Part shown: piece after piece, positions 4,969-62,424 of the stretch | Position numbering within the stretch: the stretch's first letter is position 1 | Layout of the letters: the number at the start of each line of letters is the position of its first letter | Assembly: GCA_977017575.1 (NCBI GenBank) | Contig: CDRNVI010000074.1 | Location: 59,753 to 123,752 of the forward strand | Direction of reading: 5' to 3' | From: Paramoeba atlantica | Taxonomy: Eukaryota > Protista > Discosea | Length of the DNA: 64,000 nt | Position numbers and translations under genes: made by a program | Notes under the pieces: model-generated | What the model was told of the DNA's origin: nothing | The model's input: the letters and a program-made list of their open reading frames with translations, nothing else | Database searches by the model: none

Positions 4969-5245
4969 TTTACGTCATCCGCAGCCCCTCACATGAACCT
5001 TTGAACATGAAGGAACTTCATGAAAACTCAGTTACACATAACAATCCTTTGACAATATTAACACAGCACAAATTCATTTTTCGGAAAAATGATTACCTGT
5101 CAAATAAAATACTCTCCCTCTCTTAATTTTTATAAATTATAAATTATAACAAAAAGTTAGTTATAATTATAATTATAATTATTTTTTATTTTAACGATAA
5201 AGATACATTTATTTCCTCCTTTCCTTCACTACTACTTCTCCCCCC

Positions 5246-7615
5246 ATGTCAGAACTCCCGCTCAAGGGACTCTTGTTCTGCGCTTACTGTGGCTCGAAAT
5301 TCGAACCACTCTCCCCCACCCACCGGTTGTGCCCAGTCTGTTTATCCACAACCGGCACTGCGTCCCGTATCATTTGGGACAAACCTAGCACCCTTGGGCC
5401 CGTTAACAACGGACTCAGGCAGACATCCACCTCCCGAGAGGCCACATCCCCCACCTCTCCTGAGCACAGGCCGTGCACCTTCTGCGCGCAGCCATTCTCC
5501 CCCAAGCGATCCTTCCACCGCCTATGCCACGATTGCGTGGAACTCCGCGCGGAGCGTCAGAAATCCGGTCTACAAACCTCCACTCCTGGCGCAGCCTCCT
5601 CCAGCTCCGCCCCTCGCCGTGACGACCACCCAGTTCGCCGCTCGCGCTCCCTCCCCCGCAGGTCATCCCCCAGAAGCTCGTCTTCCCGCGCGAGGTCGAA
5701 CTCGAGACCGCCCCTTCAACGACAGTCCGAAGGACCTCGCACACGCTCGCGGTCTAGGGTATCTTTCGCCCCCAGGAACACTTCTTCACATGACTCCGAA
5801 TCATACGCCGACAAGGCCAAGTCCCTTTCACCCCCGATTCTTAGGAAAACAAGGTTAGGTACAGATCCCCCCCCTCAAACCCCCACACCCCTTGGCAGAG
5901 CCCCATCACACAAGGAACAGCTAGCTCTCATAGGTAAGATGAACCAGGATTCCCTGGGTACCTACATCAAACACCAGCGAGACGACGGAGTGCCCTTCGG
6001 GTTGAAGAGGGAAGTGACAGCCAACCGGCTGTCATGCGCCGTCCGAGAAATGGAGAGAGAGTACCTGGCGACAAGGGATGCCCTCTACACCGAGTGGCTA
6101 GACCTCCTCTGTCAGGACGCCCGTCAGGAATACAGACATCGCCAGCTTGTCATAGACAAAGCCCATCTGTGTCAGACCTGCGGACAGGTTTTTCGGGACC
6201 AGCGACGCTTGATCGAGCACAAAACCGTCCATGAAGTGGCCGCGGCCCGGGCGATGGTATCCCGTCTCTCATCAGAGCACCGCCAGGGAGCGATGATGAT
6301 TGCGGAACAACAGTGGGCCTCTGCTGCCGACCTCTTCGACCATCTCTACCAACAACTCCAAAACCTGTACGCACTCCCCCCCGGCCCCTCCCCCGACCCC
6401 ACGGAAACGCACAACTTGGAAGTGGACGACCCTCCCCCTCCCTTTGCCGCCAAACCTCCCGCCCTCACAATCACCCCAACCGACGCCCCTAGTGGCCCTT
6501 ACCCATCACCTCCCCACCAGCAAGGCGGACACCAACCCTCATCTTCGACGCAACCCTCCGAAGAATCGTGGACTAGGGTCAACCTGCACCTCGGACCCCA
6601 CTTGGCCGGACACATCCAGGTCCCCGTCCCTGCCAGACACCCCCTACAGAGTTTCATACAAGCGGTGGGCTTTACTCTGGGGGTCCCCCCCGACCGTATA
6701 AGCCTGACCAACGAGCCGGGAGGGCCATACCTGGTGACCGATGAGGACCTGGCAGAGGCTGAGTGCATATGGGCCTCTCTGCTCACTCCAAACCACGGCC
6801 CCTCCCACGGTCCCCACGTCAAAGTCTTCGACGGATCGGGAGCAGGAGCAAGCATAGAGACGCCGTCCGATCTCCCAGGCGAACATATCCCCTTTTTCCT
6901 ATGCCACGCCCTGGGTATAGCCCAGTGCTTTGCAGGAGCCTGGACCCCGTTCGCGTCGGAGGGCGGAACGGCGTGCTGGAGCTTCACGCCCACGGGGGGA
7001 CTGATAGCTGACTCGGGGTGGTCGGCCGAGTTAGTCCGGTGTAACCTCCGTAGAGGGTGCATCGAAGCCAACCCGGGACCACGCCGCGCAAAACGGAAGA
7101 ATACAACGCCCAAATCCTCCGACCCCGCGGACAGTAACCCCGTGAACGTAACGGGACAGACGAGCACACAAACCGAGGACACCCCTACCCCACTACCCGA
7201 CCCCCACATTACAGACCCCATTCCCACACCCCCGCATCAGGGGGGGGCCAAGCCGGATGCCAGCGAGGATTGCGCCGAGGCTGGCAGCCTCAGAGCGGGC
7301 CCGTATCCAAAATCCCATTGTAATGGGGGGCCCATCCCGACACCCAACAGCTTTTCATCGGGCCCTAAGTCCACAACCCCTGTTCTGGGGGGGCCATGCC
7401 GGATGCCAGCGAGGATTGCGCCGAGGCTGGCAGCCTCAGAGCGGGCCCGTATCCAAAATCCCATTGTAATGGGGGGCCCATCCCGACGCCCCACAGCTTT
7501 TCACCGGGCCCTAAGTCCACAACCCCTGTTCTGGGGGGGCCATGCCGGATGCCAGCGAGGATTGCGCCGAGGCTGGCAGCCTCAGAGCGGGCCCGTATCC
7601 AAAATCCCATTGTAA
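5246..7615 (+). CDS. N-terminal part of the CRE-like element polyprotein
   Basis: Two CxxC..CxxC motifs, C2H2 finger CQTCGQVFRDQRRLIEHKTVH, Ser/Arg-rich tract, 2A-like GCIEANPGP; the frame runs into the repeats. Confidence 0.75.
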   Translation: MSELPLKGLLFCAYCGSKFEPLSPTHRLCPVCLSTTGTASRIIWDKPSTLGPVNNGLRQTSTSREATSPTSPEHRPCTFCAQPFSPKRSFHRLCHDCVELRAERQKSGLQTSTPGAASSSSAPRRDDHPVRRSRSLPRRSSPRSSSSRARSNSRPPLQRQSEGPRTRSRSRVSFAPRNTSSHDSESYADKAKSLSPPILRKTRLGTDPPPQTPTPLGRAPSHKEQLALIGKMNQDSLGTYIKHQRDDGVPFGLKREVTANRLSCAVREMEREYLATRDALYTEWLDLLCQDARQEYRHRQLVIDKAHLCQTCGQVFRDQRRLIEHKTVHEVAAARAMVSRLSSEHRQGAMMIAEQQWASAADLFDHLYQQLQNLYALPPGPSPDPTETHNLEVDDPPPPFAAKPPALTITPTDAPSGPYPSPPHQQGGHQPSSSTQPSEESWTRVNLHLGPHLAGHIQVPVPARHPLQSFIQAVGFTLGVPPDRISLTNEPGGPYLVTDEDLAEAECIWASLLTPNHGPSHGPHVKVFDGSGAGASIETPSDLPGEHIPFFLCHALGIAQCFAGAWTPFASEGGTACWSFTPTGGLIADSGWSAELVRCNLRRGCIEANPGPRRAKRKNTTPKSSDPADSNPVNVTGQTSTQTEDTPTPLPDPHITDPIPTPPHQGGAKPDASEDCAEAGSLRAGPYPKSHCNGGPIPTPNSFSSGPKSTTPVLGGPCRMPARIAPRLAASERARIQNPIVMGGPSRRPTAFHRALSPQPLFWGGHAGCQRGLRRGWQPQSGPVSKIPL

Positions 7616-8510
7616 TGGGGGGCCCATCCCGACACCCCACAGCTTTTCATCGGGCCCTAAGTCCACAACCCCTGTTCTGCGGGGGGGGGCATGCCGGATG
7701 CCAGCGAGGATTGCGCCGAGGCTGGCAGCCTCAGAGCGGGCCCGTATCCAAAATCCCATTGTAATGGGGGGCCCATCCCGACACCCCACAGCTTTTCATC
7801 GGGCCCTAAGTCCACAACCCCTGTTCTGGGGGGGGCATGCCGGATGCCAGCGAGGATTGCGCCGGGGCTGGCAGCCTCAGAGCGGGCCCGTATCCAAAAT
7901 CCCATTGTAATGGGGGGCCCATCCCGACACCCAACAGCTTTTCACCGGGCCCTAAGTCCATAACCCCTGTTCTGGGGGGGGCATGCCGGATGCCAGCGAG
8001 GATTGCGCCGAGGCTGGCAGCCTCAGAGCGGGCCCGTATCCAAAATCCCATTGTAATGGGGGGCCCATCCCGACACCCCACAGCTTTTCATCGGGCCCTA
8101 AGTCCACAACCCCTGTTCTGGGGGGGGGCATGCCGGATGCCAGCGAGGATTGCGCCGAGGCTGGCAGCCTCAGAGCGGGCCCGTATCCAAAATCCCATTG
8201 TAATGGGGGGCCCATCCCGACACCCAACAGCTTTTCACCGGGCCCTAAGTCCACAACCCCTGTTCTGGGGGGGGCATGCCGGATGCCAGCGAGGATTGCG
8301 CCGAGGCTGGCAGCCTCAGAGCGGGCCCGTATCCAAAATCCCATTGTAATGGGGGGCCCATCCCGACACCCAACAGCTTTTCACCGGGCCCTAAGTCCAC
8401 AACCCCTGTTCTGGGGGGGGCCATGCCGGATGCCAGCGAGGATTGCGCCGAGGCTGGCAGCCTCAGAGCGGGCCCGTATCCAAAATCCCATTGTAATGGG
8501 GGGCCAACCC
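7242..8510 (+). repeat. About 9 tandem copies of a 146-149-bp GC-rich unit inside the CRE-like element
   Basis: Unit starts at 7396, 7542, 7691, 7837, 7983, ~8130, 8276, ~8423; length differences lie mainly in a G-run. Confidence 0.95.
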
Positions 8511-8604
8511 CGCACTCTCACGGGACCCTGATCGAGCACATCGCGGCGGCCGCCAATGTACCCAAAACTTCTCAGCGGACGACGGGACAGGGGGGACATC
8601 GGAG

Positions 8605-10581
8605 GTGGGGGGAGTGTCTTCCACCACACGAAACAAGCAATCCACCCCGACAACCCAGGGCGCTCCAGTTGAGGTGCGTGGACAAGCCCCTTCCCCCGAA
8701 AATTTAGCAGAGCTCCTTGGGAGGGGGTCCTTACGTAAACTGTACGCACTCCAATACCCGGCTTGGAAGGAATACACTGCCAGTGTATGCCACGATTTTA
8801 TTAATAAGTCGGTGGAGGGCAAGGTCGAGATAGCCTGGAACCTCCTCCTCGCCGTTAAACGTTTCCTTTTCCTCCCCGAGGACAAGTTGTCGCAACGCCA
8901 GCTAGCGCGCGAACTTAGAATGCGCGCCCATTTAGAGGGGTCGGAGACCTTGGCTCCATCCCCGAGTCAGGCCAACGGCCCCCCGTGGTCTGTCAAAAAA
9001 CGGGTCGAGGAATTGTGCAGGGCGGGTTGCTTCTCCAGGGCGGCCAAAACGATGGAGGCGCCCCTTAATCCTCCGGCCAACCCCACGGCGGCCCTAGAAC
9101 AGGCAAAACGTCTACACCCCACAGGCGGGCCCTACACTGCGGGGAAATTCAGGTACAACAGGGACCGACACGGAACCCTACCCTCCCCCGCCGATGTGGC
9201 CAGGAAGGCTCAAATCCTGGCCCCTATCCGCGCCCCCGGACCTACGGGATGGACCAAGGAACTGCTTGTCCCAGTCCTCATGGAAGATGGACCCCGCGAG
9301 TGTATCACGTGGATAATCCACGGGATAATGACCAACTCCCTCCCCCCCTCAATGAGGGAACTGCTCACGGGGGCGTCCTTAAAACTATTCACCAAACCGG
9401 ACTCCCCGGCGGGGCACCACTCTTCCTACAGGCCCATCGCCATGGGAGAGTGCATCCTCAAGGTGGCGGGGCTCCTTGCCCTGGAGAAAATCCGGGAACA
9501 TCTCCCCACTTACTTTCAGGGCATCCAGTTTGGAGCCCAATACGCGCAGGGGTGTGAGCACATAATTTATAATGTGCGACAGCACTTCAGGGACAGGCCG
9601 AAGGAGGTCATCGTGGCGGCAGACCTCGAGAACGCCTTTAATAGCATCTCACGGTCGGCAATTTTTAGGGCGGTAAGGGGGGATCCGAAACTTCTCCCCA
9701 TTGAGGGCATCACCCTTTTCAGCTACGGCCCCACCAGTACCCTTCACCTTGGGGAAGGCCAATGCATCACGAGCTCAAGGGGGGTCAAGCAGGGCGACCC
9801 CATGGCTCCCATCCTATTTGCCATAGGGATCCAGGGGGCAATCGCCAGAGTGGCGGCCAACTTCACAGGCACGCTGAAGGTCTGGGCGTACCTGGATGAC
9901 GTCACCTTTGCTGGTGAACCCAAGGTTTGCGCGGAAGCCCTAGAGGCCCTCCGCGAGGAGCTGAAACATCTTGGGCTACGGTTAAATACCGCTAAATGCA
10001 AAGTAGCTACCAGACGCGAGGACCTCTTCTCCGAGTTCTCCGGATCTCGCATGGTCCACTCCCCCGGGGGGGTCAAACTACTGGGGGCCTTCATCGGGGT
10101 GTCGGAGGCTAGGGAGGAAGAATGGGTGCTTTCCAAGGCCCCCAAGGTAATCTCCTTCCTGGGGAAACTCAAGGACATTAGCAGGCAATGCGCCTTGCCC
10201 CTTTTAAGACTCTGTGGGAGTCCTCGATGGAACTACATCGTAAGGACCCACGACCCCCCGGTCACTAAAGTGGCCAATACCCAGGTCGACAAAGCCGTCC
10301 TGGCATGTGCTGAGGCCTTGCTCGGGGGGATGGGCTCCTTGGGAAAAACGCCGTTCTCCAATAACCTTTTCACGGCAGATTTCCTGGGGACCATCCCCTT
10401 CGCGCACAAGGCGGAAGACATGCAGGCCAAGGCGAAGAACGCCCTACAGGCCGACCCCAAGGCATGTCAGCCAAGGAACAGCGGCGCAACCTCTGTGAGG
10501 CCGCGTTGGGGAAAGCCCCGACGGCCACCCAACTGGTCTGCATGCGACAGACCCAGAACATTCACTCCACTAAGTGGATGA
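8605..10581 (+). CDS. Reverse transcriptase region of the CRE-like element
   Basis: YRPIAMGE, IQFG, DLENAFNSISR, GVKQGDPMAPILF, AYLDDV, GLRLNTAKC. Confidence 0.9.
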   Translation: MGGVSSTTRNKQSTPTTQGAPVEVRGQAPSPENLAELLGRGSLRKLYALQYPAWKEYTASVCHDFINKSVEGKVEIAWNLLLAVKRFLFLPEDKLSQRQLARELRMRAHLEGSETLAPSPSQANGPPWSVKKRVEELCRAGCFSRAAKTMEAPLNPPANPTAALEQAKRLHPTGGPYTAGKFRYNRDRHGTLPSPADVARKAQILAPIRAPGPTGWTKELLVPVLMEDGPRECITWIIHGIMTNSLPPSMRELLTGASLKLFTKPDSPAGHHSSYRPIAMGECILKVAGLLALEKIREHLPTYFQGIQFGAQYAQGCEHIIYNVRQHFRDRPKEVIVAADLENAFNSISRSAIFRAVRGDPKLLPIEGITLFSYGPTSTLHLGEGQCITSSRGVKQGDPMAPILFAIGIQGAIARVAANFTGTLKVWAYLDDVTFAGEPKVCAEALEALREELKHLGLRLNTAKCKVATRREDLFSEFSGSRMVHSPGGVKLLGAFIGVSEAREEEWVLSKAPKVISFLGKLKDISRQCALPLLRLCGSPRWNYIVRTHDPPVTKVANTQVDKAVLACAEALLGGMGSLGKTPFSNNLFTADFLGTIPFAHKAEDMQAKAKNALQADPKACQPRNSGATSVRPRWGKPRRPPNWSACDRPRTFTPLSG

Positions 10582-11252
10582 ACGCATGGCCCAACAGGCC
10601 GGAGTATTACATGCGGGACCCGCAGTGGGAGACTGCGGCCCGTCTCCGGTACTTGGTCGCCCCCACCTCGGAACCTGAGCTCCAGTGCGTGTGCGGTGCA
10701 ACCCTCCGCAATGAGGAGTTTTGCGTACACGCACTGGATTGCAAAAAGGTTAAGGGGAAGACCCAGGCCTCCCGCCACAAGGAGGTCAAGGAAACCTTTC
10801 GAAACCTTCTTGTGCAGTATGGTTTCAAACCGGACCTACACGAACCGAGGTTCGACAATGGACGGGGGCCCGGCATATGCTTCCAGCTGGGACGGAAGAC
10901 TGCCCTAGTTGATGTCACCGTGGTGAACCCACTGGCCCCGTCCTACGTGGAGAAGGAGGCCGCAGAGCCCTCTCATACCCTGAGGATGGCAGAGGCCAAC
11001 AAGCGGCGCTCACACGATGAGATGGCGACCGCCCGAGGGATGGAATTTTACCCCTTGGCCTTCACCACGTATGGGATCCCGGGCCCAGAGACTTTGAACT
11101 TCCTAACCAAGGTGGCCCGGGCTCACTCATCCGACAAGAACGGATGCATGTCCCACCTTCTGATGGCCATAGGGGTGGCCATCCAGAAAGGTAATGCCCA
11201 GATTGTACAGGCGGCAGTACAAGACTGGTACCGCCGCGGGGTACGAGGCTAG
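10464..11252 (+). CDS. C-terminal restriction-like endonuclease of the CRE-like element, frameshifted from the RT near 10455-10465
   Basis: CVCG..HALDC zinc knuckle, SRHKEVK, RGPGI..VDVTVVNP, AEANKRRSH, FYPLAFTTYG. Confidence 0.8.
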   Translation: MSAKEQRRNLCEAALGKAPTATQLVCMRQTQNIHSTKWMNAWPNRPEYYMRDPQWETAARLRYLVAPTSEPELQCVCGATLRNEEFCVHALDCKKVKGKTQASRHKEVKETFRNLLVQYGFKPDLHEPRFDNGRGPGICFQLGRKTALVDVTVVNPLAPSYVEKEAAEPSHTLRMAEANKRRSHDEMATARGMEFYPLAFTTYGIPGPETLNFLTKVARAHSSDKNGCMSHLLMAIGVAIQKGNAQIVQAAVQDWYRRGVRG

Positions 11253-11578
11253 CTGGGCGATGGGATTAGGGAGGGAGGGGGTATAATTATAATTATAAAA
11301 ATTAATGATACCGTGTAAATGACCGCTATTCCAAAAGGTCGACGCTAGTACGATCTGTAAGATGGTAGTGCCAGGGAAGACCGCGAGTAGATCCCGGCCA
11401 TGCTTCCCCATGCAGATTTTTTTCAGCGAATCGCGTTTTACAAAAATCAGTATCTTCATCTCAGAAAGAAAATCCCCCCCAAAAAGATTGTCTTTTCCCC
11501 TACATGAGCATTTTTTCATGAATCAATATCTGAAGCTGAGAGTCAAATAAGCAAAAGAAATCACATAGAGGTAATGTA

Positions 11579-44404: not shown

Positions 44405-44510
44405 AACTTTAACGATAAAGATACAGTTTCTGTACCTTGTTGGTATGAGAAGCTTCGAACTCTAAGTTCGCTTGAAGGCCCTGGTTCCCGAGAAGGGAAC
44501 TGGGGCTTAT
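44405..44510 (+). ncRNA. Spliced-leader (mini-exon) RNA
   Basis: AACTTTAACGATAAAGATACAGTTTCTGTACCTTGTTG|GTATGAGAAGC: conserved ACAGTTTCTGTAC core and TG|GTATG donor, then hairpins CGAAC/GTTCG and CCCYGGTTCCC/GGGAACTGGGG. Confidence 0.92.
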
Positions 44511-44802
44511 TTGCGTTACAATAACTCTGTCACCAGGCAGTCTGACTCGCAAAATCGGACTCCACCGATAAATAGGCAGGATGGCATGTTCATTAACGTC
44601 TGAAAATCTGCGGCACCGCAATTTAAATCTGCACCCATCCTAACACATCACACAATATATCAACCAATCTTCTCGGTCATCCGCAATCCCGGTCAATGCC
44701 TCCTACAAAGATCTCAACGACACCTATAATCAGGCCAGCAATCGTGGAAAATTTGTGCAAATCCAATATATGCATGAACACCCTCACGGGTGGACCTTGT
44801 TT

Positions 44803-45333
<531 letters not shown>

Positions 45334-47127: not shown

Positions 47128-47233
47128 AACTTTAACGATAAAGATACAGTTTCTGTACCTTGTTGGTATGAGAAGCTTCGAACTCTAAGTTCGCTTGAAG
47201 GCCCCGGTTCCCGAGAAGGGAACTGGGGCTTAT
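47128..47233 (+). ncRNA. Spliced-leader RNA
   Basis: Same exon and donor as 44405. Confidence 0.92.
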
Positions 47234-47531
47234 TTGCGTTACAATAACTCTGTCACCAGGCAGTCTGACTCGCAAAATCGGACTCCACCGATAAATAGGC
47301 AGGATGGCATGTTCATTAACGTCTGAAAATCTGCGGCACCGCAATTTAAATCTGCACCCATCCTAACACATCACACAATATATCAACCAATCTTCTCGGT
47401 CATCCGCAATCCCGGTCAATGCCTCCTACAAAGATCTCAACGACACCTATAATCAGGCCAGCAATCGTGGAAAATTTGTGCAAATCCAATATATGCATGA
47501 ACCTTGTTGATTAAATAGGGGAATACCCCAA

Positions 47532-50500
47532 ATGAAACCATGTCGTCGTAAGCACAAGCGAGGAGGCAGAAGCCGGAAACGTCGAAAAGAGCGAGCTACC
47601 TTCTACGGCCGACAACGAAAGAGTCGTCGAAGGAATACAAACAATAGAGCTCCCATAAAATCCAAAAGTCCGCGTACCGATGATCCCGCGACTACCGAAA
47701 CTGAGAAAATATCACAGACCCCTGACAAGATTACGAGGCAAAGCAGAATCACCGTACACAAACGGCAAGCGCCAGCCAAAAAGAATGCACTTAAGAAAAC
47801 ATCGATCCGTCGTAAAAAAGGAAGAAAAGGTACTAGTCGAGCCGCCAGCCGACCAAGGAAAAAGAGTCGACCTCGAGGATTCACCGCCGGAACATATAAC
47901 GTGAGGACATGGAATGCAAAGCAACGTGACCCACAGGGAACCTGGATGGAGGGAGCTATATCAACCATTCGTATGGCGTCAATCGCTGGAATCGACCTCC
48001 TAGCCGTCCAGGAGTGCCGAATACCAGGAGTCGACAAAGTCGAAATCCCAGTTCAAAAAGGTGAAACATGGACGCTCATACACAGCGGTTGCAAGACTGG
48101 GAAACTCCAGAGAGGAGTTGGTTTCTTACTTAGTCCTAAGGCAAGTAAGGCGCTGATAAGCTTTGAAGGCGTATCAGATAGAATATTAACTGCAAGCTTT
48201 AAAATTGCCAACACCCGCAACATGTATGCAATCTCCGCATATGCGCCCACTGAAGATTCCCTATCCTGCGAAAAGAACGGTTTCTACGCAGATCTGGAGG
48301 ACGCCATGGCCAATAGACCCAACCAAGAAATTCCCCACATTTTCGGGGACTTCAACGCAGTAATAAAGAGCACCCCGCTACTGTTTCCCAACGTCGGATC
48401 AAACGCAACAGGAATCAAGACAAGTGACAACGGCCGCAGATTGGCCGAATTCTCAAAGATACATAGACTCATTTTGTCTAACACCTCACTGGAGCAGTCA
48501 AACGAAAATAGTCTCGGAGACCAAGCTTGGACCTGGAGACACCCTGCAGGGCTGACTCAGAACCAAATAGACTATATCTTAATACCTCTACATGTTCTAG
48601 GAGAAAACACAACAGTAATTTCGGAATTACCGTATGAGAGTGACCATCGCATAGTGTGTACAACACTGAGCTATCGACCGTCAACAAAGAAAAAGAACTC
48701 CCGCACTATAAATTGCATTGAACCACTGCGCGCAAACCCCTCAAAGCAGCAATTGTACCAGGAGCTAATGGGCGTAAAATTACAGCATCACTCACTGAGT
48801 GAGGATATAGAATCAGAATGGAGTGACCTAAAAATCGCTCTCTTAGAAACATCCAAGCAAGCATGCGCTAACACTTGTATCCAAACCAACCTCCCATGGA
48901 TGAATGACGAACTCTTACGAAAGATAGCAGAAAAACAAGACTCTCTATTGCGATACAAGTCGCATCATTCAACTTCTAAGGAAAAAGAGAAGGCACACCT
49001 TAATTATCGCTGCAAACGTCGAATAGCCTTTCGTTCTTTCAGGTTAGCAAAGCGTACCTACTTCGCCCAAAAGGTAAAGCAGATTGAGACTGTCAGGGCT
49101 GAGGGAAATCACCACAAGCTATTTAAACTAACAAAAGAATTGACAAAACTAACCTACCCACCAAATAACGATAAACCTGCAATTCGAAACAAAGATGAAA
49201 TGGTCTCTGACCCAGAGGCCAAAGCGCAAGCACTGGCCACTTCCTTTTCTAGGATATTTAACACACCAAACCCCCTATTTAATTTATCCAGAGTACAACA
49301 AGACCTAGAAGAACTAAAGTACCCTGCCATAGAGGACGATGTCCTTCGCATGGAAAAAGAAGAAAATAGTTATCCTCCAAACGAACTGGAAGTAGAACGC
49401 GCACTGTCTACACTAAAAAATAGGAAAGCACAAGGCCCAGACGGAATTTTCCCCGAACATCTCAAATATGCAGGAAAAGCCGCAATTATTTGGATGACAT
49501 GGATATTGAAACTTTGCTGGCAAAACTCCAAGGTTCCCAAAGAGTGGACGCACTCCCACATCATACCAATCTACAAAGGCGCAGCAAAAGGCAAAGCCTG
49601 CGATCCCGGATCCTACCGCCCAATTTCAATAATGAGCCCTGCAGCGAAAGCCCTATCTGGCATACTCACACATCGTATTGCAGCGCGCGTCGATGCTAGA
49701 CTTCTAGAAGCCCAAAATGGCTTCCGACATAATAGAGGTATAGACGATGCGATCTTCATACTCAGAAGAATCACGGAGGAAGTCAGGAGACACAAATCAC
49801 CGTTATATCTTGCCTACCTGGATCTCGAGAAGGCTTATGATACCTTACCACGAGAGGCAGTCTGGGCCACCCTTCAGAGTTTGAAAATTGAAGGACCATT
49901 ATTGGAACTAATTCGCGCACTATATAACACAACAACTGCAAGCGTCATGTTAAACGACGGCACGAAGAGTGAAAGCTTCGAAATACCTGGCGGCTTAAAA
50001 CAAGGCTGTCCAATGAGCTGCCTGCTATTCAAGGGTTATGATCATACGCTCGTGGCGCAGAGATGCGTCTCTCTGTGTGACGGCCGATACCATCGGCGCA
50101 TGACCCGCATACGACGGGTGTCACACAGAGAGTGGAGTGCGAGGTAGGAGACGAGACGCCCATCGGTCATGCTACAGCACGTATAGCCATGGTTCATGCT
50201 GCAACACGATCAAGCCGTGGGTTCATGCTGTCAGATGGTCTATCGTGGATCATGATGCATCATGGGGAGGTCCGTTACCGCCGCACTCGCTACAGCATGT
50301 AGGGAGAGAGGGGTGCAAGTTCGCATCCCCTATACACTCATACAACGTGTCCTCCCGCTGTAGCACGCCCAGTGGTCCTCAAGGGAGGCCACCATGGCGC
50401 ATAGCTCCCGGGAGAAGAAAGCACGAGAAGGAGAGAGCCGGGGAGGGAAGAAAGCTCACTCGAAGAGAGCGAGCCGGGGAGGGGTGAAGAGTGCGAAGTG

Positions 50501-51646
50501 CGTCCCCTACTTCCGCGACAAAGAGGGACAGTTTCAGCTAGCCGTCAGCCGGAAACGGGCATTTAAAAGTAAGAATACGCCCGTTTCCGGGAAAAGAAAG
50601 GAAGGGCTAGCAAAATGTACCAACAAGGTACAGAAAACAACATTTGATGCTGTACTCCGGAAAGCACTACAGATTAAAACTGCAGGCATCCGTGTCGAAT
50701 GGAGGATCCCAAAAGGAAGAGCTCAACGAGGCGATAAAGTAACCGGTACAGATGTTTTCGGACTCATAGCGTATGCGGATGACCTTGTTCTTTGGTCGGA
50801 CGAACAAACGGAACTGCAAAATACCTTAAACGCAGTAGTAGGGGTTATGAACCGATGGGGAATAAGGATAAACACAAGGAAAACTAAAACACAGGTAATT
50901 CAACCTTGCAAAGAGAAGAAACTATTGAACAAGTACGGAACTTCTCATACCTTGGAACAGTCATCAGTGAAGATGCTTCATTGGAAGAAGAAATAGAAAA
51001 CAGAATAAGAAGAGCTTGCGCAGGTATGAGAAAATTTAGAGACTTGTGGAAAGACAAGGCTATCACAAGGAAAACGAAAAGACTCATCCTGGAAGTCTGT
51101 ATAGTACCAATTCTACTATATGCGAGCTCAACGTGGGCGCTTACACCAACCCAGCATCTGAAACTCAACCGCGCCTATATAAGATACATCAAAACATCTT
51201 TCGGCATACCATGGGTCAAGAACGACAATAGCGCCTACAATGATAAACAGCACCAAGAATCTGCGAAGGATGCAATAAGATATACCTCCCAGAAGGAATG
51301 CCTATCGATCGCAGGAATGGACCCACTCCAGCCACAAATAGATGCCCGAAGTTTACTGTTTGCTGGACACGTCGCAAGAATGGGTCCAGATAGATTCCCG
51401 AACAGAGTGTTATTCGGCAAATATCGATCAACTCAAAATAGAGGAAATACATATAAACGAAGCCTGCCATGCTATAGTAGAAGCCTTGTAGCTGCACTGG
51501 AAAGAGTTGGGATAACAACAGATTGCTCATGGAAACTGAAAGCCCAGAATAAAAAAAGTTGGATAAAGATAATAGATGAATATAGAAAGAGCACGAAAAC
51601 CCAAACGTTAAACAAAGGTAATAAAAAATCATTCTCAAGGAACTAA
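47532..51646 (+). pseudogene. APE-RT ORF of LINE copy 1, interrupted and frameshifted
   Basis: APE: TYNVRT, LAVQEC, GVGFLL, SAYAPT, GDFNA, NQIDYIL, SDH. RT: SYRPISI, QNGFR, YLDLEKAYD, GLKQGCPMS, YADD, FAGHVARM. Confidence 0.85.
50031..50633. other. 603-bp structured insertion (X2) splitting RT copy 1
   Basis: Lies between codons TTC and AAA; four in-frame stops; homologous to X1; ends antisense to SL. Confidence 0.85.
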
Positions 51647-52529
51647 AACTGTGTGAACGCTAGACCCTGTAATGGATAGGCCTGAAATGCACCCTGAAGA
51701 TGAGCCCCTAAGGGGAACTTCATACCGCTTTTCGGGTTGGGTACCGCTCATCTGCGGCTTGCAACTGACCCATTAAAACGGGGTTAGGGTCAGAATTCGG
51801 AGAGATAGGAGCTCTTTGAAGCCGAAGTTTAGCCCGTTGAAGCTGAGGAGCCAAGGCCACTCGGGGGTATAACACCCTAGAAGACTTGGTCCATTGAAGC
51901 TGAGGAGTCTAAACTGTTGAAGCTGAGACTCAACGCTCCCGAACTATGCCAGCAAGCAGTAGTGGGCGGCTACTCCGGGGGAGGCCACTCTCGGTCCTGC
52001 GGAACATACTTATGTAGTCCTTGGATTTGCATGCTGTCCTTGGATTTGAATGTCTCAACCTGAAAGGGTTAAGATAGTTCAGCGGACAAGGTGGATGAAA
52101 ATCCACCTTTGAGTGATAGCCTCCCCCAAAGCTACCTCGGCTTACTCCGGGGAGGCAACATCCCCAATGGGATAGAAAGCCTAACAACATTCACATTCAA
52201 CATATGCATGAACACCCTCACGGGTGGACCTTGTTTATCATACGCTCATTGGCGCAGAGATATTCCCCTTAATGCGACGGTCGATATCATCGGCACATGA
52301 TCCGCCCACAACGGATGTCGCACCAAGGGGCATTTGGAACGATAACACGAGGCAGAGTCACGCACAGCGGTACTCAAGGGGAAGTCTCAAGGGAAAAAAG
52401 CTCACTCAAAGAGTGAGCCGGGGAGGGGTAATGGGAAGCGCGTCCCCTGCTTCACCGAAGAAAGAGGGGCAGTTTCGCCCTTACTGCCGGCCGGCAACGG
52501 GCATGTAACAGTAAGACTCTTCCCGGTGC

Positions 52530-54796: not shown

Positions 54797-57700
54797 CTTG
54801 TTGATTAAATAGGGGAATACCCCAAATGAAACCATGTCGTCGTAAGCACAAGCGAGGAGGCAGAAGCCGGAAACGTCGAAAAGAGCGAGCTACCTTCTAC
54901 GGCCGACAACGAAAGAGTCGTCGAAGGAATACAAACAATAGAGCTCCCATAAAATCCAAAAGTCCGCGTACCGATGATCCCGCGACTACCGAAACTGAGA
55001 AAATATCACAGACCCCTGACAAGATTACGAGGCAAAGCAGAATCACCGTACACAAACGGCAAGCGCCAGCCAAAAAGAATGCACTTAAGAAAACATCGAT
55101 CCGTCGTAAAAAAGGAAGAAAAGGTACTAGTCGAGCCGCCAGCCGACCAAGGAAAAAGAGTCGACCTCGAGGATTCACCGCCGGAACATATAACGTGAGG
55201 ACATGGAATGCAAAGCAACGTGACCCACAGGGAACCTGGATGGAGGGAGCTATATCAACCATTCGTATGGCGTCAATCGCTGGAATCGACCTCCTAGCCG
55301 TCCAGGAGTGCCGAATACCAGGAGTCGACAAAGTCGAAATCCCAGTTCAAAAAGGTGAAACATGGACGCTCATACACAGCGGTTGCAAGACTGGGAAACT
55401 CCAGAGAGGAGTTGGTTTCTTACTTAGTCCTAAGGCAAGTAAGGCGCTGATAAGCTTTGAAGGCGTATCAGATAGAATATTAACTGCAAGCTTTAAAATT
55501 GCCAACACCCGCAACATGTATGCAATCTCCGCATATGCGCCCACTGAAGATTCCCTATCCTGCGAAAAGAACGGTTTCTACGCAGATCTGGAGGACGCCA
55601 TGGCCAATAGACCCAACCAAGAAATTCCCCACATTTTCGGGGACTTCAACGCAGTAATAAAGAGCACCCCGCTACTGTTTCCCAACGTCGGATCAAACGC
55701 AACAGGAATCAAGACAAGTGACAACGGCCGCAGATTGGCCGAATTCTCAAAGATACATAGACTCATTTTGTCTAACACCTCACTGGAGCAGTCAAACGAA
55801 AATAGTCTCGGAGACCAAGCTTGGACCTGGAGACACCCTGCAGGGCTGACTCAGAACCAAATAGACTATATCTTAATACCTCTACATGTTCTAGGAGAAA
55901 ACACAACAGTAATTTCGGAATTACCGTATGAGAGTGACCATCGCATAGTGTGTACAACACTGAGCTATCGACCGTCAACAAAGAAAAAGAACTCCCGCAC
56001 TATAAATTGCATTGAACCACTGCGCGCAAACCCCTCAAAGCAGCAATTGTACCAGGAGCTAATGGGCGTAAAATTACAGCATCACTCACTGAGTGAGGAT
56101 ATAGAATCAGAATGGAGTGACCTAAAAATCGCTCTCTTAGAAACATCCAAGCAAGCATGCGCTAACACTTGTATCCAAACCAACCTCCCATGGATGAATG
56201 ACGAACTCTTACGAAAGATAGCAGAAAAACAAGACTCTCTATTGCGATACAAGTCGCATCATTCAACTTCTAAGGAAAAAGAGAAGGCACACCTTAATTA
56301 TCGCTGCAAACGTCGAATAGCCTTTCGTTCTTTCAGGTTAGCAAAGCGTACCTACTTCGCCCAAAAGGTAAAGCAGATTGAGACTGTCAGGGCTGAGGGA
56401 AATCACCACAAGCTATTTAAACTAACAAAAGAATTGACAAAACTAACCTACCCACCAAATAACGATAAACCTGCAATTCGAAACAAAGATGAAATGGTCT
56501 CTGACCCAGAGGCCAAAGCGCAAGCACTGGCCACTTCCTTTTCTAGGATATTTAACACACCAAACCCCCTATTTAATTTATCCAGAGTACAACAAGACCT
56601 AGAAGAACTAAAGTACCCTGCCATAGAGGACGATGTCCTTCGCATGGAAAAAGAAGAAAATAGTTATCCTCCAAACGAACTGGAAGTAGAACGCGCACTG
56701 TCTACACTAAAAAATAGGAAAGCACAAGGCCCAGACGGAATTTTCCCCGAACATCTCAAATATGCAGGAAAAGCCGCAATTATTTGGATGACATGGATAT
56801 TGAAACTTTGCTGGCAAAACTCCAAGGTTCCCAAAGAGTGGACGCACTCCCACATCATACCAATCTACAAAGGCGCAGCAAAAGGCAAAGCCTGCGATCC
56901 CGGATCCTACCGCCCAATTTCAATAATGAGCCCTGCAGCGAAAGCCCTATCTGGCATACTCACACATCGTATTGCAGCGCGCGTCGATGCTAGACTTCTA
57001 GAAGCCCAAAATGGCTTCCGACATAATAGAGGTATAGACGATGCGATCTTCATACTCAGAAGAATCACGGAGGAAGTCAGGAGACACAAATCACCGTTAT
57101 ATCTTGCCTACCTGGATCTCGAGAAGGCTTATGATACCTTACCACGAGAGGCAGTCTGGGCCACCCTTCAGAGTTTGAAAATTGAAGGACCATTATTGGA
57201 ACTAATTCGCGCACTATATAACACAACAACTGCAAGCGTCATGTTAAACGACGGCACGAAGAGTGAAAGCTTCGAAATACCTGGCGGCTTAAAACAAGGC
57301 TGTCCAATGAGCTGCCTGCTATTCAAGGGTTATGATCATACGCTCGTGGCGCAGAGATGCGTCTCTCTGTGTGACGGCCGATACCATCGGCGCATGACCC
57401 GCATACGACGGGTGTCACACAGAGAGTGGAGTGCGAGGTAGGAGACGAGACGCCCATCGGTCATGCTACAGCACGTATAGCCATGGTTCATGCTGCAACA
57501 CGATCAAGCCGTGGGTTCATGCTGTCAGATGGTCTATCGTGGATCATGATGCATCATGGGGAGGTCCGTTACCGCCGCACTCGCTACAGCATGTAGGGAG
57601 AGAGGGGTGCAAGTTCGCATCCCCTATACACTCATACAACGTGTCCTCCCGCTGTAGCACGCCCAGTGGTCCTCAAGGGAGGCCACCATGGCGCATAGCT

Positions 57701-59529
57701 CCCGGGAGAAGAAAGCACGAGAAGGAGAGAGCCGGGGAGGGAAGAAAGCTCACTCGAAGAGAGCGAGCCGGGGAGGGGTGAAGAGTGCGAAGTGCGTCCC
57801 CTACTTCCGCGACAAAGAGGGACAGTTTCAGCTAGCCGTCAGCCGGAAACGGGCATTTAAAAGTAAGAATACGCCCGTTTCCGGGAAAAGAAAGGAAGGG
57901 CTAGCAAAATGTACCAACAAGGTACAGAAAACAACATTTGATGCTGTACTCCGGAAAGCACTACAGATTAAAACTGCAGGCATCCGTGTCGAATGGAGGA
58001 TCCCAAAAGGAAGAGCTCAACGAGGCGATAAAGTAACCGGTACAGATGTTTTCGGACTCATAGCGTATGCGGATGACCTTGTTCTTTGGTCGGACGAACA
58101 AACGGAACTGCAAAATACCTTAAACGCAGTAGTAGGGGTTATGAACCGATGGGGAATAAGGATAAACACAAGGAAAACTAAAACACAGGTAATTCAACCT
58201 TGCAAAGCAGAAAAGTATTACACATCCGAGATAAAAGCACAAGAAGAAACTATTGAACAAGTACGGAACTTCTCATACCTTGGAACAGTCATCAGTGAAG
58301 ATGCTTCATTGGAAGAAGAAATAGAAAACAGAATAAGAAGAGCTTGCGCAGGTATGAGAAAATTTAGAGACTTGTGGAAAGACAAGGCTATCACAAGGAA
58401 AACGAAAAGACTCATCCTGGAAGTCTGTATAGTACCAATTCTACTATATGCGAGCTCAACGTGGGCGCTTACACCAACCCAGCATCTGAAACTCAACCGC
58501 GCCTATATAAGATACATCAAAACATCTTTCGGCATACCATGGGTCAAGAACGACAATAGCGCCTACAATGATAAACAGCACCAAGAATCTGCGAAGGATG
58601 CAATAAGATATACCTCCCAGAAGGAATGCCTATCGATCGCAGGAATGGACCCACTCCAGCCACAAATAGATGCCCGAAGTTTACTGTTTGCTGGACACGT
58701 CGCAAGAATGGGTCCAGATAGATTCCCGAACAGAGTGTTATTCGGCAAATATCGATCAACTCAAAATAGAGGAAATACATATAAACGAAGCCTGCCATGC
58801 TATAGTAGAAGCCTTGTAGCTGCACTGGAAAGAGTTGGGATAACAACAGATTGCTCATGGAAACTGAAAGCCCAGAATAAAAAAAGTTGGATAAAGATAA
58901 TAGATGAATATAGAAAGAGCACGAAAACCCAAACGTTAAACAAAGGTAATAAAAAATCATTCTCAAGGAACTAAAACTGTGTGAACGCTAGACCCTGTAA
59001 TGGATAGGCCTGAAATGCACCCTGAAGATGAGCCCCTAAGGGGAACTTCATACCGCTTTTCGGGTTGGGTACCGCTCATCTGCGGCTTGCAACTGACCCA
59101 TTAAAACGGGGTTAGGGTCAGAATTCGGAGAGATAGGAGCTCTTTGAAGCCGAAGTTTAGCCCGTTGAAGCTGAGGAGCCAAGGCCACTCGGGGGTATAA
59201 CACCCTAGAAGACTTGGTCCATTGAAGCTGAGGAGTCTAAACTGTTGAAGCTGAGACTCAACGCTCCCGAACTATGCCAGCAAGCAGTAGTGGGCGGCTA
59301 CTCCGGGGGAGGCCACTCTCGGTCCTGCGGAACATACTTATGTAGTCCTTGGATTTGCATGCTGTCCTTGGATTTGAATGTCTCAACCTGAAAGGGTTAA
59401 GATAGTTCAGCGGACAAGGTGGATGAAAATCCACCTTTGAGTGATAGCCTCCCCCAAAGCTACCTCGGCTTACTCCGGGGAGGCAACATCCCCAATGGGA
59501 TAGAAAGCCTAACAACATTCACATTCAAC
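54797..59529 (+). mobile_element. RTE-like APE-RT retrotransposon, copy 2 (intact apart from the 603-bp insert)
   Basis: TSD at 54785-54796 and 59530-59541; ORF halves 54826-57324 and 57928-58974 share one frame. Confidence 0.93.
57325..57927. other. 603-bp structured insertion (X2) splitting RT copy 2
   Basis: Appears identical to 50031-50633. Confidence 0.85.
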
Positions 59530-59857
59530 ATATGCATGAACACCCTCACGGGTGGACCTTGTTTATCATACGCTCATTGGCGCAGAGATATTCCCCTTAA
59601 TGCGACGGTCGATATCATCGGCACATGATCCGCCCACAACGGATGTCGCACCAAGGGGCATTTGGAACGATAACACGAGGCAGAGTCACGCACAGCGGTA
59701 CTCAAGGGGAAGTCTCAAGGGAAAAAAGCTCACTCAAAGAGTGAGCCGGGGAGGGGTAATGGGAAGCGCGTCCCCTGCTTCACCGAAGAAAGAGGGGCAG
59801 TTTCGCCCTTACTGCCGGCCGGCAACGGGCATGTAACAGTAAGACTCTTCCCGGTGC

Positions 59858-61839: not shown

Positions 61840-62424
61840 TTGCGTTACAATAACTCTGTCACCAGGCAGTCTGACTCGCAAAATCGGACTCCACCGATAA
61901 ATAGGCAGGATGGCATGTTCATTAACGTCTGAAAATCTGCGGCACCGCAATTTAAATCTGCACCCATCCTAACACATCACACAATATATCAACCAATCTT
62001 CTCGGTCATCCGCAATCCCGGTCAATGCCTCCTACAAAGATCTCAACGACACCTATAATCAGGCCAGCAATCGTGGAAAATTTGTGCAAATCCAATATAT
62101 GCATGAACACCCTCACGGGTGGACCTTGTTTATCATACGCTCATTGGCGCAGAGATATTCCCCTTAATGCGACGGTCGATATCATCGGCACATGATCCGC
62201 CCACAACGGATGTCGCACCAAGGGGCATTTGGAACGATAACACGAGGCAGAGTCACGCACAGCGGTACTCAAGGGGAAGTCTCAAGGGAAAAAAGCTCAC
62301 TCAAAGAGTGAGCCGGGGAGGGGTAATGGGAAGCGCGTCCCCTGCTTCACCGAAGAAAGAGGGGCAGTTTCGCCCTTACTGCCGGCCGGCAACGGGCATG
62401 TAACAGTAAGACTCTTCCCGGTGC

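What the first reader, a model, noticed from the sequence alone, without database searches (positions are those of the whole stretch)
50618..50636. The insert ends in 19 nt exactly antisense to the SL exon-intron junction
Seen: TACCAACAAGGTACAGAAA (50618-50636; 57912-57930) is the reverse complement of SL nt 23-41 (TTTCTGTACCTTGTTG|GTA). Two further G-U pairs are possible with unspliced SL RNA. The last AAA doubles as the RT Lys codon. Inference, with alternatives: on + the RNA could base-pair over the SL donor site (guide, decoy or recruiter of SL RNP, or a panhandle with its own trans-spliced leader). Alternatively, on - the insert begins with SL target sequence followed by a pyrimidine leader, like the CRE-like element at 5190, making X a CRE-mobilised SINE from an SL gene. 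Caveat: this SL segment is itself a near-palindromic hairpin, but the loop also matches only in antisense.
Basis: partly seen in the sequence, partly recalled or inferred. Interest (0 to 1): 0.85.

Follow-up and report, generated by a model that had tools for sequence, protein, structure and literature searches.

The report
Leftover spliced leader on a retroposon
The 19 bases antisense to the spliced leader are real, but they are the shortened leader tag at the front of a small mobile element lying on the opposite strand, and nothing here supports an RNA that pairs with the leader's splice site.

Summary
The 19-mer is present as described. It occurs twice only because a 7.3-kb SL/5S unit carrying a LINE was duplicated.

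Assembled reads hold the same LINE without the insert. That fixes insert X at 50033-50637: 605 nt replacing TG. So the whole 19-mer belongs to X, and the "AAA Lys codon" is not LINE sequence.

Ten more full-length X copies (95-99% identical, unrelated flanks) and one diverged copy were fetched from the same assembly.
- On the minus strand, 11 of 12 copies begin with a piece of the SL exon. It always ends at exon nt 38 and starts at nt 10-25.
- The exon is fused to X at one of two sites 14 nt apart, the second directly after an AG.
- The "GTA" is therefore the start of X's body at the upstream junction. Three copies lack it.

Best reading (0.8): X is a non-coding retroposon whose minus-strand RNA is trans-spliced and then reverse-transcribed. 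The 19-mer is a 5'-truncated relict leader.

The antisense guide or decoy idea is not supported.

Other first-stage notes flagged SL-headed retroposons elsewhere in this genome. The partner reverse transcriptase and the source gene were not found.

The parts
50618..50636 (-). Relict spliced leader: SL exon nt 23-38 (16 nt) plus GTA, the first three bases of X's body at junction 1
   Evidence: Comparison with 11 other copies.
50033..50637 (-). Retroposon X, copy 1. 605 nt, non-coding, sense strand is the window's minus strand, inserted antisense in the RT domain of the LINE
   Evidence: Empty-site joint 50032->50638 with TG between. RVT_1 profile split 6-130 | 149-194. 95-99% identical copies at 10 other loci.
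57327..57931 (-). Retroposon X, copy 2. Same insertion, duplicated with the 7.3-kb unit; its 19-mer is at 57912-57930
47503..52191 (+). Non-LTR retrotransposon (LINE) copy 1 in the SL/5S spacer. 12-bp target duplication ATATGCATGAAC. Its 5' end CTTGTTG matches the last bases of the SL exon. RT broken by X.
54797..59519 (+). LINE copy 2, same site and same duplication. Carries 34 nt that copy 1 lacks after 50913.
44405..44445 (+). Canonical SL gene: exon nt 1-38 plus GTA. Further copies have nt 23 at 47150, 54444 and 61756.
   Evidence: 5S rRNA genes on the minus strand of each unit.
44790..45082 (-). Diverged, internally shorter X-like copy fixed in every SL/5S spacer (also about 52237-52516, 59565-59844, 62132-62411). 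Its minus-strand 5' end is replaced by a (CT)n tract, so no SL is visible.
5190..11279 (+). CRE-like retrotransposon with SL nt 4-21 at its 5' end (5190-5207). It carries a different kind of SL piece and shares no sequence with X.

Best explanation
X is a roughly 590-nt non-coding, structured retroposon whose sense strand is the window's minus strand.

Proposed mechanism:
1. X RNA is transcribed and receives the 38-nt spliced leader by trans-splicing, at either of two acceptors 14 nt apart.
2. It is copied into DNA starting from a structured 3' module without a poly(A) tail.
3. cDNA synthesis often stops inside the leader, mostly at nt 10-13 and sometimes later.
4. The copy integrates without a target duplication.

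The window's copy stopped at leader nt 23 and landed antisense in the RT domain of a LINE in the SL/5S spacer. That unit was later duplicated. Read on the + strand, its 5' tag (leader nt 23-38 plus X's first bases GTA) is the 19-mer.

Shown: the family, its ends, the two junctions and the empty site.
Inferred: trans-splicing as the source of the leader, and the reverse transcriptase involved.
For: 1. Empty LINE allele in read contigs (joint 50032->50638 with TG between). The target holds no SL sequence, so the SL came in with X.
2. X depth in the contigs is 10-30 times that of the LINE.
3. Ten further full-length copies, 95-99% identical, have unrelated flanks and private substitutions.
4. On the minus strand, 11 of 12 copies start with an SL exon suffix that always ends at G38. 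It starts at nt 10, 11, 11, 11, 11, 12, 13, 19, 20, 23 and 25. One copy is truncated past the SL.
5. There are two junctions: SL|GTACATTTTGCTAG|CCC in 8 copies and SL|CCC, directly after that AG, in 3. The second type occurs in both 3'-end subfamilies, so it is not one inherited deletion.
6. The diverged copy L005b has a body 83% identical to X but an SL part identical to the canonical SL at 28 of 28 positions. That suggests the leader is added afresh.
7. The LINE in the same window also begins with the last bases of the SL exon fused to unrelated sequence.
8. G-U pairs in the conserved 3' stem of L005b and the spacer copy exist only on the minus strand.
9. A loose contig end after 50636 continues into SL nt 12-22, as in the longer-tagged copies.
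10. Relict leaders are an accepted hallmark of retroposed trans-spliced RNA in dinoflagellates (PMC5585692).
Against: - No source locus with an unspliced acceptor upstream of GTACATTTTG was found.
- There is no poly(A) tail and no target duplication, unlike a typical processed mRNA copy. The one site with a known empty allele shows a 2-bp deletion.
- No partner element sharing the 3' module was found in the window or the fetched loci.
- There is no stranded RNA evidence. The single RNA-run contig covers only 50035-50168 and has no direction.
- The first three bases after the exon (GTA) equal the intron's first three. Under this reading that is a 1-in-64 coincidence. GTACA also completes a 6-bp hairpin with the exon's TGTAC.
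- Only 12 copies of a high-copy family were sampled, and they were picked through ORF calls.
Confidence: 0.8

Rival explanations
1. X is an SL-RNA-derived SINE. Its head would be a retained piece of an SL RNA gene (the exon plus the first intron bases, now GTACA) fused long ago to an unrelated body. Copies with the SL|CCC junction would come from later trans-splicing at the downstream AG.
For: - GTA after the exon equals the intron start.
- GTACA differs from the intron's GTATG by two transitions that keep the hairpin with the exon's TGTAC.
- Other first-stage notes in this genome propose SL-RNA-headed SINEs (unchecked).
Against: - There is no similarity to the SL intron beyond 3-5 nt.
- No copy starts at SL nt 1-9.
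- This reading still needs trans-splicing to explain the second junction, so it uses two mechanisms where one is enough.
- L005b's SL is 28/28 identical to the canonical SL although its body is 17% diverged, which argues against an old inherited head.
- With many SL-headed families in this genome, one followed by GTA is not surprising.
Confidence: 0.12
2. On the + strand, X or the LINE+X transcript uses the 19-mer to pair with SL RNA over the donor site, as a guide, decoy or recruiter, or forms a panhandle with its own leader.
For: A 19-nt perfect complement exists and would pair if both RNAs met. Six other full-length copies and L005b also contain the exact 19-mer.
Against: - The SL-complementary piece varies from 0 to 29 nt between copies.
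- Its donor-site part is absent in L001, L007 and L008, and the whole piece is absent in L006.
- In 7 of 9 loci with Pfam-supported neighbours, X's minus strand runs in the neighbours' direction. Host transcripts there would carry the SL sense sequence, not the antisense.
- The insert breaks the RT and is a dead end for the LINE.
- There is no evidence of + strand transcription.
Confidence: 0.03
3. The SL piece is a target-site remnant. X would be a SINE moved by the SL-specific CRE-like element and carried out of an SL gene cut near nt 21-23.
For: The CRE-like element at 5190 carries SL nt 4-21, and the window's X starts at nt 23, which looks complementary. The 2-bp target deletion resembles what I recall for restriction-like-endonuclease elements such as R2 (own knowledge).
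Against: - Other copies start at nt 10-25, not at one cut site.
- The SL piece always ends at the exon's last base rather than running on into the canonical intron.
- The known empty site has no SL.
- X shares no 3'-end sequence with the CRE-like element.
Confidence: 0.03

Closest known systems
Relict spliced leaders of retroposed trans-spliced mRNAs in dinoflagellates (Slamovits and Keeling 2008, as cited in Song et al. 2017, PMC5585692)
   Same: Leader sequence is encoded in the DNA at the 5' end of a retrocopy, is often truncated, and sometimes occurs as several partial leaders in a row. It is read as a tag of a mature trans-spliced RNA that was reverse-transcribed.
   Different: - Here the tagged RNA is a high-copy non-coding repeat, not a protein-coding gene.
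- The organism carries a kinetoplastid/diplonemid-type SL.
- Copies lack poly(A).
- Leader starts cluster at nt 10-13 rather than at an internal AG.
SINE-like non-autonomous retroposons of trypanosomatids (RIME, NARTc, SIDER; SIRE with VIPER)
   Same: Short, non-coding, dispersed elements that depend on another element's enzymes. X has conserved end modules and a variable centre.
   Different: Trypanosomatid retroposons share the Pr77 5' signature, which gives unspliced transcripts (PMC8190864 abstract). X instead carries the spliced leader itself. No partner was identified, and no poly(A) or target duplication was seen.
SL-gene-specific retrotransposons (CRE1/CRE2, SLACS, CZAR)
   Same: They are associated with SL sequence. 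A CRE-like copy in this window carries SL nt 4-21 at its 5' end.
   Different: By my recollection those elements sit inside SL genes at a fixed exon position, so their SL flank is target or promoter-proximal sequence. X sits at many non-SL sites, and its SL piece ends at the exon's 3' end.

Membership tests
Retrocopy of a trans-spliced RNA (relict SL) | DNA-encoded SL ends exactly at the exon's last base and is fused to non-SL sequence | tested here: met
   11 of 12 copies end at G38. There are two fusion points, one directly after an AG.
Retrocopy of a trans-spliced RNA (relict SL) | Dispersed copies with independent flanks and variable 5' truncation | tested here: met
   Flanks are unrelated. 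SL starts range from nt 10 to nt 25, and one copy is truncated past the SL.
Retrocopy of a trans-spliced RNA (relict SL) | The SL came with the insert and not from the target | tested here: met
   The empty LINE allele has no SL sequence at the site.
Retrocopy of a trans-spliced RNA (relict SL) | Poly(A) tail and target-site duplication of a processed mRNA copy | tested here: not met
   3' ends are ...GTATGATCATRACC or ...GTATGATATCATRT with no A-run. The one known empty site shows a 2-bp deletion.
Retrocopy of a trans-spliced RNA (relict SL) | Source gene with an unspliced acceptor, and SL-bearing transcripts | not testable with these tools
   No genome-wide DNA search of this assembly was available. 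The only RNA run gave one undirected contig.
SINE (non-autonomous non-LTR retroposon) | Short, non-coding, repeated | tested here: met
   About 590-605 nt, stops in all six frames, depth 10-30 times the LINE, 12 copies sampled.
SINE (non-autonomous non-LTR retroposon) | Head derived from tRNA, 7SL or 5S RNA with an internal Pol III promoter | tested here: not met
   No Rfam match above noise and no tRNA-like structure.
SINE (non-autonomous non-LTR retroposon) | 3' tail shared with a partner LINE | tested here: inconclusive
   Not shared with the LINE or the CRE-like element of this window. Other elements of the genome could not be searched.
Target remnant of an SL-specific (CRE/SLACS-type) insertion | SL flank begins at one fixed cut site and continues as the SL gene | tested here: not met
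   SL starts vary from nt 10 to nt 25. The sequence after the exon is X's body, not the canonical intron.
Antisense regulatory or guide RNA against the SL donor site | The antisense segment is conserved in extent among copies | tested here: not met
   Its length runs from 0 to 29 nt. The donor-site part is absent in 3 copies and the whole segment in 1.
Antisense regulatory or guide RNA against the SL donor site | Transcribed on the + strand and bound to SL RNA | not testable with these tools
   No stranded RNA data were available.

The most novel reading that the evidence does not exclude
X's head is a true piece of an SL RNA gene: the exon, the GU donor held in its native hairpin, and an AUUUUG just behind it. 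That would make X the first SL-RNA-derived SINE, and its transcripts might still engage the trans-splicing machinery. A more modest version is that X amplifies only through trans-spliced intermediates, and that the cluster of cDNA stops at SL nt 10-13 marks a block in the leader such as a modification.
Probability: 0.1. Interest if true: 0.7.

Novelty: new variant of a known kind. Interest (0 to 1): 0.35.

Why it matters
The proposal of an RNA that pairs with the spliced-leader donor site loses its basis. The match is a passive by-product of retroposition.

What remains is a young, high-copy, non-coding retroposon family that records its own trans-splicing in DNA, in a genome with a kinetoplastid/diplonemid-type leader. 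Such copies offer three things without RNA data:
- a map of trans-splice acceptor use;
- evidence that retroelement RNAs here are leader-capped;
- a reproducible stop of reverse transcription at leader nt 10-13 that could be followed up.

Comparable relict leaders are documented for dinoflagellate genes. My four full-text paper searches did not turn up a repeat family of this kind in Euglenozoa. Other first-stage notes of this scan describe similar elements elsewhere in the same genome.

Tried and rejected
1. Spliceosomal intron. X starts near a GT and ends in CAG, but the GT..AG removal I tested (50035-50633) leaves a frameshift and a stop. The true empty allele differs by TG, which splicing cannot produce.
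2. A 5-bp CAAGG target duplication, which would have put 13 nt of the 19-mer in the LINE. The empty-site joint refutes it.
3. SL-like ACCTTGTT next to the spacer copy (44794-44801) as a + strand leader tag. On the minus strand it is X's 3' end plus flank, so it is best read as chance.
4. Rfam at a permissive threshold on X and on the spacer gave only noise. ARAGORN found nothing.
5. Exact look-up of an X ORF found nothing. Homology searches with two X ORFs did give the ten extra loci.
6. A metagenome scan with the 3'-module motif returned six GC-rich contigs with only about 22-27 nt matches. These are chance hits.
7. A full-text search for the SL sequence gave no paper, so the organism was not identified.
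8. 3'-end comparison and folding of X, the LINE and the CRE-like element showed no shared sequence. Generic hairpins alone are not evidence.
9. L001's Utp14 neighbour is not the window's 539-aa ORF, so no second empty allele was obtained.

Full report
**Context**

The right-hand third of the window is a tandem array of a 2723-bp unit.
- Each unit has a spliced-leader (SL) gene on the + strand. SL nt 23 lies at 44427, 47150, 54444 and 61756.
- Each unit has a 5S rRNA gene on the minus strand.
- Two neighbouring units are 7.3 kb long because each holds a 4.7-kb non-LTR retrotransposon (47503-52191 and 54797-59519).
- Both LINE copies sit at the same spacer position with the same 12-bp duplication, ATATGCATGAAC.
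- The two copies are 99.97% identical over the first 3.4 kb and identical over the last 1.3 kb, apart from one 34-nt indel.

One insertion was therefore duplicated with its unit. The two 19-mers (50618 and 57912) count as one event.

**The observation**

The 19-mer is present exactly as described. It is the reverse complement of the SL gene from nt 23 to three bases into the intron. No match is expected by chance.

**Limits of the insert**

Contigs of two public runs laid on 47400-52300 hold the LINE without the insert. They join 50032 to 50638 with TG between.
- X is therefore 50033-50637: 605 nt in place of TG.
- The empty LINE encodes F-N-A-T-F-D at that point, within the RT domain.
- Pfam RVT_1 matches profile positions 6-130 just before X and 149-194 just after it.
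- The whole 19-mer belongs to X. The terminal AAA is not a LINE codon.
- The target contains no SL sequence.
- Contig depth over X is 10-30 times that over the LINE, so X is a high-copy family.

**Other copies**

Two open frames inside X were used as protein queries. They returned ten proteins from one ENA assembly. The encoding contigs gave ten loci, L001-L010.
- Each locus holds a full-length X, 95-99% identical to the window's copy, with private substitutions.
- The flanks are unrelated to each other.
- L005 also holds a diverged copy, L005b, which is 83% identical over the part that aligns and has a different centre. It lies head-to-tail with the X copy.

**What the ends show**

The minus strand is informative.
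- Eleven of twelve copies begin with a suffix of the SL exon that always ends at the exon's last base, G38.
- The suffix starts at nt 23 in the window. In the other copies it starts at nt 10, 11, 11, 11, 11, 12, 13, 19, 20 and 25.
- L006 is truncated further in and has no SL.
- After G38 there are two kinds of junction. Eight copies continue GTACATTTTGCTAG and then CCCTTCC. Three copies (L001, L007, L008) continue directly with CCCTTCC, which is the base after the AG of that 14-mer.
- The family has two 3'-end subtypes...GTATGATCATRACC, and ...GTATGATATCATRT in L003, L006, L008 and L010. The short junction occurs in both subtypes, so it is not one inherited deletion.

An exon-end junction at two alternative AG-type sites is what trans-splicing produces. 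A variable 5' start is what incomplete reverse transcription produces. The 19-mer of the window is therefore SL nt 23-38 plus the first three bases of X's body.

**Further support**

- L005b's body has diverged by 17%, yet its 28-nt SL part is identical to the canonical SL. If the SL part had drifted with the body, about five differences would be expected. This suggests the leader is added afresh to each RNA.
- The LINE of this window also begins with the last 7-9 bases of the SL exon joined to unrelated sequence.
- The conserved 3' module of X folds into a 13-bp stem carrying two hairpins (z = -4.5).
- In L005b and in the spacer copy that stem has a different sequence but keeps its pairing. 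It contains one and two G-U pairs respectively on the minus strand. On the + strand these would be A-C mismatches. The functional RNA strand therefore agrees with the SL orientation.
- A contig end after 50636 runs on into SL nt 12-22, as in the copies with longer tags.

**What does not fit a plain processed-mRNA copy**

- There is no poly(A).
- There is no target duplication. The one site with a known empty allele shows a 2-bp deletion.
- Several 3' flanks begin with TT(G/T). This suggests either a few more bases on the RNA's 3' end or priming by microhomology.
- Reverse transcription probably starts at the structured 3' module, as in elements that recognise a specific 3' end.
- The enzyme's source is unknown. 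X shares nothing with the 3' ends of the LINE or of the CRE-like element of the window.

**The GTA**

Under the trans-splicing reading, the identity of X's first three bases with the intron's first three is a 1-in-64 coincidence.
- GTACA also pairs perfectly with the exon's TGTAC. It differs from the intron's GTATG by two transitions that keep that hairpin.
- This leaves room for an origin of X's head from an SL RNA gene.
- Against that origin: there is no similarity beyond these bases, no copy starts at SL nt 1-9, the second junction needs trans-splicing anyway, and L005b's SL is pristine.
- This genome holds many SL-headed families according to other first-stage notes. One followed by GTA is therefore expected by chance.
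- I put the SL-gene origin at about 0.12.

A + strand guide, decoy or panhandle would require a conserved antisense segment.
- The segment's length runs from 0 to 29 nt.
- Its donor-site part is missing in three copies.
- In 7 of 9 loci with Pfam-supported neighbouring genes, X's minus strand points the same way as the neighbours. Host transcripts there would carry sense SL, not antisense.
- Pairing of a LINE+X transcript with SL RNA is physically possible, but it would be an accident of one dead LINE copy.

The alternative, a minus-strand element beginning with SL, has the orientation right. But the SL is not a target remnant and there is no link to the CRE-like element.

**Comparison with known systems**

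- Relict leaders upstream of retroposed genes are well documented in dinoflagellates, including tandem partial leaders (PMC5585692).
- Trypanosomatid retroposons share the Pr77 5' signature and give unspliced transcripts (abstract of PMC8190864).
- A high-copy non-coding repeat tagged by the leader itself, in an organism with a kinetoplastid/diplonemid-type SL, is a new variant of a known kind. The similarity to kinetoplastid and diplonemid leaders is from my own knowledge. The linkage of SL and 5S genes agrees with the description in PMC10161547.
- The organism was not identified.

**Limits**

- Twelve copies of a much larger family were sampled, and they were found through ORF calls.
- No stranded RNA data were available.
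- No genome-wide DNA search of the assembly was possible.

Noticed in passing
L003:2940-3010; L010:2240-2262; L005:2100-2140 (minus strand): SL tags start at nt 10-13 in 7 of 11 copies. Three copies carry extra stuttered partial SL pieces upstream (for example ATAAAGATACAGTTTCT, then ATAAGATACAGTAC, then the tag). This suggests a block to reverse transcription near SL nt 10, with template jumping.
   Followed up: partly
L005:931-2125: A diverged X-like copy (L005b) and a young X copy lie head-to-tail on the minus strand. L005b's 3' end abuts SL nt 13 of the next copy. This could be a chimeric retrocopy made by template switching, or nested insertion.
   Followed up: no
window 50913/50914 versus 58208-58241: LINE copy 1 lacks 34 nt that are present in copy 2 and in the read contigs of three runs. 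Copy 1 therefore carries a private deletion in the RT region.
   Followed up: partly
L010:728-3306: In L010, X sits between called genes with RVT_1 and RNase_H hits, in their orientation. Counting the window, 2 of 11 sampled copies lie inside retroelement pol genes.
   Followed up: no
L001-L010 and window: X's sense strand runs in the direction of Pfam-supported neighbouring genes in 7 of 9 loci. It is opposite at the REH2-like helicase locus L002 and in the window's LINE. The sample is small and not significant.
   Followed up: partly
window 44794-44801: ACCTTGTT, identical to SL nt 30-37, lies next to the spacer X-like copy on the + strand. On the minus strand it is X's 3' end plus flank, so it is probably chance.
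   Followed up: partly
window 47503-47509: The LINE's 5' end CTTGTTG matches the last bases of the SL exon (nt 32-38, or 30-38 counting AC of the duplication) and is joined to the element's leader. This is a second relict SL in the window.
   Followed up: partly
window 5163-5189 and 11282-11298: The CRE-like element is flanked on both sides by TATAATTATAATTATAA-type repeats. This is a possible target duplication in a microsatellite, outside any SL gene.
   Followed up: no
window 50035-50168: One contig of a probable RNA run covers X's minus-strand 3' end and joins it to a different flank. A copy of X elsewhere may therefore be transcribed with its flank, or the run may contain DNA.
   Followed up: no
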